A stretch of DNA of 63,629 nt, counting the filler, from Octopus bimaculoides (Eukaryota), in assembly GCF_001194135.2 (NCBI RefSeq). It is 8 parts of 7 records of this genome, joined end to end, with 100 filler letters (N's around TTAATTAATTAA, not from the genome) between each part and the next. Parts side by side here need not be neighbours in the genome. Positions count along the whole stretch, not along the records: positions 20,329 to 36,042 come from NC_068982.1; 7 more parts are not named here. One strand, 5' to 3'. Position 1 is the stretch's first letter. Every line of letters starts with the position of its first letter. Shown here piece after piece: positions 35,564 to 36,042 of this stretch. The translations under genes and the position numbers were made by a program. The notes under the pieces are model-generated. The model had not been told where the DNA came from. It saw only the letters and a list, made by a program, of their open reading frames with translations, and searched no databases.

Positions 35564-36042
35564 CATTATTTACATTTGACGGATATTTGTCCTCATCTTG
35601 TTTGTTGTTAACACAACATTTTGGTTGATATACCCTCCAGCTTTCATCAGATGTCTTGGGGGAATTTCGAACCTGGGTTCTCATTCCTAAGGTATTTTTT
35701 CGATGTTATTATTATTATTATTATTATTCAGGTTACTGCCTGCAATAGAACTCAGAATCTCGGTGTTAGTAGCCTGCACTCTTAACCGCTACGCCATATG
35801 CCCATGGGTGTACGTGGTTAAGAGCACAGGCTACTAACCCCAAGATTCTGAGTTTGATTCCAGGCAATGACCTGAATAATAATAATAATGATAATAATAA
35901 TAATAATAATAATAATAATATCGAAAAATACCTTAGGAAGGAGAACCCAGGTTCGAAATTTCCCCAAGACACCTGGTGAAGGCTGGAGGGTATATCAGCC
36001 GAAACGTTGTGTTAACAACAAACAAGATGAGGACAAATATCC
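35564..36042. mobile_element. Palindromic tRNA-head/hammerhead element, copy 2 (right end lost at joint)
   Basis: Inverted arms centred on CCCATGGG (35801-35808); hammerheads at ~35609-35656 (-, decayed) and ~35968-36013 (+, CTGGTGA variant). Confidence 0.85.

What the first reader, a model, noticed from the sequence alone, without database searches (positions are those of the whole stretch)
35564..36042. Second palindromic copy and a third centre fragment suggest the fold-back is built into the family
Seen: copy 2 has the same arms around the centre CATATG-CCCATGGG. The fragment at 39471-39540, on a different segment, reads ATATGCCC-GT-GAGCATAT-GGCGTAG, so it retains the inverted centre. Copy 1 has a single CATATG, as expected if sequence between two CATATG direct repeats was deleted. 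Arms within each copy differ by independent substitutions and different (TAA)n lengths, which argues against a read-level foldback artefact. Inference: the transposing unit is the palindrome, with consensus centre near CATATGCCCRTGGGCATATG.
Basis: partly seen in the sequence, partly recalled or inferred. Interest (0 to 1): 0.72.

Follow-up and report, generated by a model that had tools for sequence, protein, structure and literature searches.

The report
Octopus retroposon inserted as inverted pairs
The two palindromes are real, old insertions of a short octopus retroposon whose tail carries a Penelope-type minimal hammerhead motif, and their head-to-head double form is the layout already described for Penelope-like elements, so this is a new example of a known kind.

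Summary
Copy 2 (35564-36042, right arm cut by the piece's edge) and copy 1 (24105-24609) are spacerless palindromes with arms of about 240 nt. The arms are only 88-89% alike and carry (TAA)n runs of different length, so they are not fold-back artefacts.

Each arm has three parts: a tRNA-promoter-like head, a (TAA)n run, and a 3' module of about 165 nt. The module contains a minimal hammerhead motif of the Penelope-like-element (PLE) type. This motif was missed by Rfam. A rule-based search found it, with 0 hits in 300 shuffles and 0 in 175 kb of octopus DNA.

Copy 1 is enclosed by a single 10-bp target-site duplication. Its inverted arm lacks the last 19 nt that the direct arm and a solitary module (copy 3) both carry. 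A head-to-head inverted copy, one duplication around the whole, a tail on one end only and a palindromic junction together match the published layout of PLE insertions.

My best reading is a non-autonomous, PLE-dependent, SINE-like retroposon, comparable to schistosome Sm-alpha. The palindrome is most likely made at integration rather than being a DNA fold-back transposon.

No further copies could be retrieved, so family-wide claims rest on two palindromes. This is a new member of a known kind, of modest interest.

The parts
35564..35705 (-). Copy 2, inverted (left) arm: 3' module. It stops at ...AAATGTAAATAATG and lacks the terminal tail.
35610..35655 (-). Copy 2, left arm: minimal-hammerhead-like motif, decayed (G12>A and two helix changes).
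35706..35728 (.). Copy 2, left arm: (TTA) run of 7.7 units.
35729..35803 (-). Copy 2, left arm: tRNA-promoter-like head. It keeps the full 5' end GGGCATATGGCGTAGCGG, with the A box at +8.
35795..35808 (.). Copy 2 centre: CATATG followed by CCCATGGG. This is the head-to-head junction of the two arms.
35804..35874 (+). Copy 2, direct (right) arm: head. It starts at ATGGGTGTACG, 6-7 nt short of the left arm's 5' end, and a B-box-like AGTTTGATTC is present.
35875..35920 (.). Copy 2, right arm: (TAA) run of 15.3 units.
35921..36042 (+). Copy 2, right arm: 3' module, cut off by the piece's edge about 65 nt before its expected end. Its tail and target duplication cannot be seen.
35968..36013 (+). Copy 2, right arm: minimal-hammerhead-like motif with one core change (A6>G).
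24091..24100 (.). Copy 1: left copy of the 10-bp target-site duplication AAACTGGTAT. It is followed by 4 nt GTAC (24101-24104), either filler or the start of a third 9-mer unit.
   Evidence: 25 of 5000 shuffles reach 10 bp
24105..24343 (-). Copy 1, inverted arm: module 24105-24255, (TTA) 6.3 units at 24256-24274, head 24275-24343. It lacks the 19-nt tail.
24159..24204 (-). Copy 1, left arm: minimal-hammerhead-like motif, with CpG>TpG at position 15.2.
24341..24346 (.). Copy 1 centre: a single self-complementary CATATG, with the axis between 24343 and 24344.
   Evidence: (I12)
24344..24609 (+). Copy 1, direct arm: head 24344-24412 (A box TGGCGTAGTGG at 24345), (TAA)n 24413-24444, module 24445-24609. 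The module includes the 19-nt tail TCCTTATCACTTAAATATA at 24591-24609.
24494..24539 (+). Copy 1, right arm: intact minimal hammerhead motif GACAC-CUGAUGA-A-GGCUGG..UCAGCC-GAAA-CG-UU|GUGUU.
   Evidence: the only strict hit; 0 in 300 shuffles; 0 in 175 kb of octopus DNA
24610..24619 (.). Copy 1: right copy of the target-site duplication AAACTGGTAT.
26351..26532 (-). Copy 3: a solitary 3' module with its full tail (26351-26516, hammerhead-like motif at 26421-26466) plus (TTA)5 at 26517-26532. It has no head of this family. It abuts a 5'-truncated copy of another octopus SINE (26533-26849, + strand) head to head. The 9-bp repeat CAGTTCTAT at 26342-26350 and 26850-26858 flanks the pair.
   Evidence: (119 of 5000 shuffles)

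Best explanation
Each arm is one copy of a short non-autonomous retroposon of an octopus genome. An arm has a tRNA-promoter-like head, an internal (TAA)n run, and a 3' module of about 165 nt. The module resembles a pseudo-LTR of a Penelope-like element (PLE) and carries a minimal, dimer-type hammerhead motif.

Shown: the arms and their parts; the motif; one target duplication around the whole of copy 1; the asymmetric ends.

Inferred: the RNA unit is the single arm. An autonomous PLE (reverse transcriptase plus GIY-YIG endonuclease) copies it at a staggered break, starting from the 3' tail. At integration a second, inverted copy is laid down head to head. This could happen because the new cDNA end snaps back on itself at the self-complementary 5' sequence (CATATG / GGGCATATGCCC) and primes its own copy, or because the other target strand primes a second cDNA. 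The inverted copy stops short of the tail, which gives the one-sided tail. One target duplication then surrounds the pair.

After insertion the arms decayed independently, by about 6% each and mostly through CpG transitions. The centres may also have lost a few bases.
For: (1) Unit insertion. A 10-bp direct repeat AAACTGGTAT lies exactly outside both ends of copy 1 (25/5000 shuffles).

(2) Asymmetric ends. The direct arm of copy 1 and the solitary copy 3 share a further TCCTYATCWCTTAAAT before the duplication. The inverted arms of copies 1 and 2 end earlier, at positions 9-13 nt apart.

(3) Hammerhead motif. A search using canonical hammerhead rules hits the module of copy 1's direct arm. It gives 0 hits in 300 shuffles of the piece and 0 in 175 kb of octopus DNA. 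The other four arms carry the same 46 nt with 1-5 decay changes, and 94.5% of helix cells are paired against 22-55% when the partners are slid.

The motif has the traits listed for PLE min-HHRs, which I read only after deriving it. These are an unpaired base between A9 and G10.1, a G10.1-C11.1 pair, palindromic 15.2-16.2, no loop 3, helix I of 5 bp and helix II of 6 bp.

(4) Published PLE layout. An inverted copy sits adjacent at the 5' end. The whole insert is flanked by an 8-10 bp duplication. A tail of about 30 bp is present at one end only. The inverted junction is palindromic and is read as self-priming.

(5) Recurrence. Both head-bearing copies here are palindromic, whereas 5' inversion occurs in 0.02% of human germline Alu insertions.

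(6) Precedent. The tRNA-derived SINE-like elements Sm-alpha and Sj-alpha carry hammerheads.

(7) Age. Arms are 88-89% identical with transition-dominated differences and no strand bias, which indicates old, neutral decay.
Against: No autonomous PLE with a matching 3' end was found, and none could be looked for in the source genome.

No further copies of the family were retrieved, so there are only two palindromes and only one testable target duplication.

Rfam reports no hammerhead. I wrote the descriptor after seeing the motif. There is no covariation among five near-identical copies. Activity is untested, and PLE min-HHRs cleave poorly in vitro.

No single arm keeps both the A and B boxes, and ARAGORN and Rfam call no tRNA. 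The tRNA origin therefore rests on a CpG-corrected consensus.

The tail is 19 nt, against the 30-40 nt reported for PLEs.

Arms within a copy are no closer to each other than arms of different copies. This neither supports nor contradicts formation from one template.
Confidence: 0.6

Rival explanations
1. An ordinary LINE-mobilised tRNA-SINE. The palindromes arose at insertion by LINE-type twin priming on two RNAs or by cDNA snap-back, with no Penelope involvement.
For: The target duplications of 9-10 bp and the complete 3' tail next to the duplication fit target-primed reverse transcription in general. R2 protein produces occasional snap-back 5' junctions. Other octopus SINE copies show inverted 5' segments, for example L068 22278-22373 (- strand) next to 22438-22719 (+ strand). 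Copy 3 pairs the module with a different SINE, tails pointing outward, inside one 9-bp repeat.
Against: Classical twin priming gives adjacent, largely non-overlapping parts of one RNA. Here both arms cover the same 240 nt. Such events are very rare for SINEs (0.02% of Alu), yet two of two copies here are palindromic. This reading does not explain the PLE-type hammerhead motif or the one-sided tail.
Confidence: 0.17
2. A DNA fold-back transposon or MITE. The palindrome itself is the mobile DNA unit, recognised through its long terminal inverted repeats.
For: The inverted repeats run the full length with no spacer. There are two palindromes and one related module within 12 kb, yet none in 175 kb of three other octopus genomes. 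That pattern could suggest local hopping.
Against: The ends are asymmetric. A 19-nt stretch shared with copy 3 lies between the right inverted repeat and the duplication, while on the left only 4 nt (GTAC) lie between. Copy 3 carries one module only, at one end of a duplicated site. The outer ends of the two inverted arms differ. The head has Pol III boxes and the module a retroelement-type ribozyme motif.
Confidence: 0.07
3. Two independent insertions, the second landing exactly at the 5' end of the first in opposite orientation; or a later inverted duplication of a single copy by replication template switching.
For: The arms are as diverged from each other as from arms of the other copy.
Against: The same exact head-to-head junction occurs twice. 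Copy 1 has one duplication around both arms and none around either arm alone. A DNA-level inverted duplication would have to end exactly at the element's borders in both cases.
Confidence: 0.08
4. An assembly or read-level fold-back artefact. This would apply especially to copy 2, which ends the piece.
For: Copy 2 lies at the edge of the piece. The sequence has many N gaps, consistent with a draft scaffold.
Against: The arms differ at 11-12% of sites and in microsatellite length. Copy 1 is internal, with unique flanks and a target duplication. There is no N inside either palindrome.
Confidence: 0.03

Closest known systems
Penelope-like element (PLE) insertions with inverted pseudo-LTRs (Arkhipova et al. 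2013, PMC3846280; Craig et al. 2021, PMC8557442)
   Same: An inverted copy sits head to head at the 5' end. The whole insert lies inside one 8-10 bp target duplication. A short tail is present at one end only. The inverted junction is palindromic or overlapping. There is a hammerhead motif in the repeat, and an association with microsatellites.
   Different: There is no reverse transcriptase / GIY-YIG reading frame between the repeats. The arms are 240 nt and start with a tRNA-promoter-like head. The tail is 19 nt rather than 30-40 nt. No sequence homology to any PLE has been shown.
Minimal (dimer-type) hammerhead ribozymes of PLE pseudo-LTRs (Cervera & de la Pena 2014, PMC4209133)
   Same: The cores CUGAUGA and GAAA are present. 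There is an extra base between A9 and G10.1 and a G10.1-C11.1 pair. Positions 15.2-16.2 are palindromic (ACGU) with no loop 3. Helix I is short (5 bp) and helix II long (6 bp).
   Different: Cleavage is untested. In the palindrome the two motifs lie on opposite strands, so one transcript holds only one sense copy. Three of the five copies have a core change (A6>G, G12>A or 15.2 C>U).
Sm-alpha / Sj-alpha SINE-like retroposons of schistosomes (PMC2770079 and references there)
   Same: A tRNA-derived SINE-like element that carries a hammerhead motif.
   Different: The phylum and the sequence differ. Those elements carry canonical type I hammerheads that Rfam detects. The papers I read did not describe a palindromic insertion form for them.
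Animal non-LTR retrozymes (PMC7229834; bioRxiv 10.64898/2026.07.22.740005)
   Same: Short, AT-rich, non-autonomous elements with type I hammerheads, proposed to derive from PLE pseudo-LTRs.
   Different: Retrozymes are head-to-tail tandem repeats that yield circular RNAs. Here the units are inverted, not tandem.
L1 twin priming (5' inversion) and R2 snap-back junctions (PMC12016303; PMC11331408)
   Same: An inverted segment lies at the 5' side of a retro-insertion inside one target duplication. Formation is by a second priming event or by fold-back of the cDNA.
   Different: In those cases the inverted and direct segments are mostly different parts of the RNA, and the events are rare for SINEs. 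Here both arms are near-complete copies.

Membership tests
PLE-type insertion / non-autonomous PLE derivative | An inverted copy lies immediately adjacent, head to head, at the 5' end of the direct copy. | tested here: met
   Copies 1 and 2 have 0-nt spacers.
PLE-type insertion / non-autonomous PLE derivative | The whole inverted-plus-direct structure lies inside one short target duplication. | tested here: met
   Copy 1 has a 10-bp AAACTGGTAT on both sides. Copy 2 cannot be tested because its right end is cut.
PLE-type insertion / non-autonomous PLE derivative | A short tail extension is present at one end only. | tested here: met
   A 19-nt tail is present on the direct arm of copy 1 and on copy 3, and absent from both inverted arms. 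It is shorter than the published 30-40 nt.
PLE-type insertion / non-autonomous PLE derivative | A hammerhead motif lies in the repeat. | tested here: met
   The rule-based descriptor gives one strict hit plus four decayed copies at the homologous position, 0 in shuffles and 0 in 175 kb. Rfam is negative.
PLE-type insertion / non-autonomous PLE derivative | The 3' end is homologous to an autonomous PLE (RT + GIY-YIG) of the same genome. | not testable with these tools
There is no match in 175 kb of three Octopus species.
tRNA-derived SINE | Internal Pol III A and B boxes at tRNA-like spacing, with the A box near +8. | tested here: inconclusive
   The A box is kept in two arms and the B box in the other two. 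Both are present only in the CpG-corrected consensus, and no single arm passes.
tRNA-derived SINE | A head recognisable as a tRNA. | tested here: not met
   ARAGORN finds no tRNA on the piece or on the consensus head, and Rfam gives no tRNA hit on the piece.
Animal non-LTR retrozyme | Head-to-tail tandem units, each with a hammerhead. | tested here: not met
   The units are inverted, and there is no tandem arrangement in the piece.
Fold-back DNA transposon / MITE | Symmetric terminal inverted repeats directly abutted by a duplication of fixed length. | tested here: not met
   Between the inverted repeat and the duplication lie 19 nt on the right and 4 nt on the left. The outer ends differ between copies.
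L1-type twin priming product | The inverted and direct segments are adjacent parts of one RNA with little overlap. | tested here: not met
   Both arms cover the same stretch of about 240 nt.

The most novel reading that the evidence does not exclude
The palindrome is self-perpetuating. In a palindromic source copy, the Pol III start site lies 5-15 nt upstream of the A box, which is inside the opposite arm. Every transcript would then begin with a short inverted repeat, and its cDNA would end in a hairpin that primes the second arm. This would give a tRNA-promoter-driven parasite of Penelope elements that always lands as a perfect hairpin of about 240 bp. It would seed octopus transcripts with ready-made double-stranded RNA, a substrate for RNA editing or RNA interference.
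Probability: 0.1. Interest if true: 0.7.

Novelty: new member of a known kind. Interest (0 to 1): 0.35.

Why it matters
The finding gives a compact example of the poorly understood Penelope integration step that lays down inverted copies. Both arms, the junction, the one-sided tail and the target duplication can all be read within 500 bp. It also links a Pol III-type head to a PLE-type hammerhead tail in a cephalopod. If the family is abundant in its source genome, it would be a built-in source of long perfect hairpins, and it would cause assembly breaks at palindromes, as at the end of this piece. None of this changes current understanding of these elements.

Tried and rejected
Looking for more copies:
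- Translated spurious reading frames of the arms were searched against the protein collection. There was no candidate.
- An 18-nt module pattern was scanned in metagenome and viral contigs. It gave 64 chance matches, and none carried the element.
- A concatenated query of translated SINE frames found only Octopus proteins containing the other SINE family. Through these I fetched 175 kb of O. bimaculoides, O. sinensis and O. vulgaris DNA. That DNA holds many copies of the two other SINE families but none of this one.
- A full-text search for sequence fragments of the element found nothing relevant.

Relatives of the mariner remnant come from unrelated genomes.

Rfam gave no hammerhead and no tRNA on the piece or on one arm at E<=10. 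The microRNA hits are microsatellite artefacts or far below threshold.

The arm-to-arm versus copy-to-copy comparison gave no signal. A test for strand bias of wobble-compatible changes, which would suggest selection for an RNA hairpin, was not significant: 22 against 14.

I first read the module as a canonical type I hammerhead with a helix III hairpin (GUUG..CAAC). I rejected that because A15.1 would face A. The loop-less ACGU reading fits instead.

Full report
WHAT IS THERE

The piece (20329-36042) is AT-rich eukaryotic DNA, full of microsatellites, N gaps and SINE-like repeats. Translations of its two commonest SINE families match SINE-containing proteins annotated in Octopus bimaculoides, O. 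sinensis and O. vulgaris. Copies 80-93% identical to those two families are frequent in loci fetched from the three species. The piece therefore comes from an octopod. The species was not determined.

The finding is copy 2. Its left arm is 35564-35803 and its right arm is 35804-36042, which runs into the piece's edge. The centre is CATATG (35795-35800) followed by CCCATGGG (35801-35808).

Copy 1 is at 24105-24609, with a single CATATG at 24341-24346 and no spacer.

Both copies fold as near-complete hairpins, with z-scores of -29 and -37 against shuffles.

The arms of a copy are identical at 171/195 sites (copy 1) and 176/198 sites (copy 2) outside the microsatellite. Their (TAA)n runs differ: 6.3 against 10.7 units in copy 1 and 7.7 against 15.3 units in copy 2. 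Differences are mostly transitions (36 against 13 transversions), with no significant strand bias.

The palindromes are therefore real and old, and they are not read-level or assembly-level fold-backs.

ANATOMY OF AN ARM

Read from the centre outward, each arm has three parts.

(i) A head of about 70 nt. Only the left arm of copy 2 keeps the full start GGGCATATGGCGTAGCGGTTAAGAG. The other three arms begin at ATGG or ATGA.
- The motif TGGCGTAG(T/C)GG fits the Pol III A box and begins at +8, as in a tRNA gene.
- AGTTCGATTCC, recovered from the TG and CA variants by reversing CpG decay, fits the B box with one mismatch, about 42 nt downstream.
- No single arm keeps both boxes.
- ARAGORN finds no tRNA on the piece or on the consensus head, and Rfam finds none on the piece.
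- The tRNA origin is therefore an inference from the consensus.

(ii) A (TAA)n run.

(iii) A 3' module of about 165 nt. It ends ...CAAATGTAAATAATGTAMAKAATTCCTYATCWCTTAAAT.

A third module, copy 3 (26351-26532, minus strand), has the (TAA)n run and the full 3' end but no head of this family.

THE ENDS

Copy 1 is enclosed by a 10-bp direct repeat AAACTGGTAT at 24091-24100 and 24610-24619. Only 25 of 5000 shuffles of the 56-nt and 66-nt stretches spanning the two ends reach that length, and the repeat sits exactly at the borders.

The structure is not symmetric. The direct arm runs 19 nt further (TCCTTATCACTTAAATATA) up to the duplication, and copy 3 shows the same 3' extension. The inverted arm of copy 1 stops at ...GTAAATAAT, followed by GTAC. 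The inverted arm of copy 2 stops one 9-mer unit earlier.

The two centres also differ. These are two separate junction events with the same topology, not two copies of one palindromic master. However, small deletions at palindrome centres after insertion cannot be excluded.

Copy 2's right end is cut off, so its duplication cannot be checked.

A HAMMERHEAD MOTIF IN THE MODULE

The module contains GACAC-CUGAUGA-A-GGCUGG(8 nt)UCAGCC-GAAA-CG-U-U|GUGUU. This reads as follows:
- helix I of 5 bp (GACAC/GUGUU);
- the CUGAUGA core;
- one unpaired A;
- helix II of 6 bp, opening with G10.1-C11.1;
- GAAA;
- the self-complementary ACGU in place of a helix III hairpin;
- a UH cleavage site.

Rfam reports nothing here, as expected for a motif without helix III.

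A search written from the canonical hammerhead rules gave one strict hit, in the direct arm of copy 1 (24494-24539). It gave none in 300 shuffles of the piece and none in 175 kb of octopus DNA. The other four arms carry the same 46 nt with one to five decay changes (A6>G; G12>A; CpG>TpG at 15.2). In the alignment, 94.5% of helix cells are paired, against 22-55% when the partners are slid. There is no covariation, which is expected for five near-identical copies.

I wrote the descriptor after seeing the motif, so the shuffle count is not an unbiased probability. However, the published description of Penelope 'min-HHRs', which I read afterwards, lists the same incidental traits:
- a base between positions 9 and 10.1;
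- a conserved G10.1-C11.1 pair;
- palindromic 15.2-16.2;
- no loop 3;
- helix I of 4-5 bp;
- a long helix II.

Those ribozymes are thought to act as dimers and cleave poorly in vitro. Activity here is untested.

WHAT IT MOST LIKELY IS

Published PLE insertions typically have the following layout:
- an inverted, 5'-truncated copy immediately upstream of the direct copy;
- the whole lying inside one 8-10 bp target duplication;
- a tail of about 30 bp at one end only;
- a palindromic or overlapping inverted junction, which the authors read as self-priming;
- hammerhead motifs in the repeats.

Copy 1 shows all of these in miniature. Copy 2 shows all that its truncation allows.

I therefore read the family as a non-autonomous, PLE-dependent, SINE-like retroposon. 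The single arm is the RNA unit, and the second, inverted arm is laid down at integration. That could happen by snap-back of the cDNA at its self-complementary end (CATATG lies 3 nt from the 5' end) or by priming from the other target strand.

The antisense strand of an arm contains a run of five or six T, which would terminate Pol III. A Pol III transcript of the whole palindrome is therefore unlikely. This reasoning comes from the sequence together with the known behaviour of Pol III at T runs.

There is precedent for a tRNA-derived SINE-like element carrying a hammerhead, namely Sm-alpha and Sj-alpha of schistosomes.

For scale, 5' inversions occur in 0.02% of human germline Alu insertions, and R2 snap-back junctions are a minor class. 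Two palindromes out of two head-bearing copies therefore point to the integration machinery rather than to accident.

WHAT IS NOT SHOWN

- No autonomous PLE with a matching 3' end was found.
- No further copies of the family could be retrieved.
- Only one target duplication could be tested.
- The arm-to-arm versus copy-to-copy comparison is flat: all pairs are 87-89% identical, and the informative sites split 3 within-copy, 2 same-side and 2 crossed. It therefore cannot say whether the two arms of a copy came from one template.
- The absence of the family from 175 kb of three Octopus species, against three elements in 15.7 kb here, suggests a lineage-specific or patchy family. This is unexplained.

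RIVALS

- A LINE-mobilised SINE with twin priming or snap-back remains possible (0.17). It leaves the ribozyme motif, the one-sided tail and the recurrence unexplained.
- A DNA fold-back transposon fails on the asymmetric ends and on copy 3 (0.07).
- Two independent insertions, or a later inverted duplication, fail on the single duplication around both arms and on the repeated exact junction (0.08).
- An artefact is excluded by the divergence of the arms and by the unique flanks of copy 1 (0.03).

VERDICT

The mechanism, however, is most likely Penelope-type retro-integration of a single-arm unit, not transposition of a palindromic DNA element. This is a new member of a known kind, of modest interest.

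Noticed in passing
window 26342-26858: The solitary module (copy 3, minus strand) abuts a 5'-truncated copy of a different octopus SINE (26533-26849, plus strand, degenerate (GAT)n tail). The two lie head to head with tails outward, and the pair is flanked by the 9-bp repeat CAGTTCTAT. This looks like one integration event that used two different RNAs. An alternative is insertion of the second SINE into the (TTA)n run with a weak TATTATT duplication.
   Followed up: partly
window 27672-28326 (minus strand): A decayed Tc1/mariner-type transposase remnant interrupted by an N gap. Its relatives are about 60% identical, one of them carrying Pfam DDE_3, and they come from unrelated genomes.
   Followed up: partly
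window 24275-24412 and 35729-35874 versus the modules: The heads are much more diverged (about 81% between any two arms) than the 3' modules (about 92%) in every comparison, including between copies. Many of the differing sites are CpG>TpG/CpA, but I did not test whether CpG density alone accounts for the difference.
   Followed up: no
L068 22278-22719; L067 6023-6303: In O. bimaculoides, copies of the abundant tRNA-like SINE (called family B here) show an inverted 5' segment next to a direct 3' segment. For example, positions 4-99 are inverted and followed by 165-390 direct. This is the classical twin-priming pattern.
   Followed up: no
window 32500-32990, 30930-31000, 31790-31875: Long (TA)n/(CA)n/(TATG)n microsatellite blocks produce all the 'microRNA' hits in Rfam, and all are below gathering score. 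They are artefacts of simple sequence.
   Followed up: yes
L067-L071 (175 kb of O. bimaculoides, O. sinensis, O. vulgaris): There is no trace of the palindromic family's head or module, although the piece carries three elements in 15.7 kb and shares its other SINE families with these species. The family may be lineage-specific or locally clustered.
   Followed up: partly
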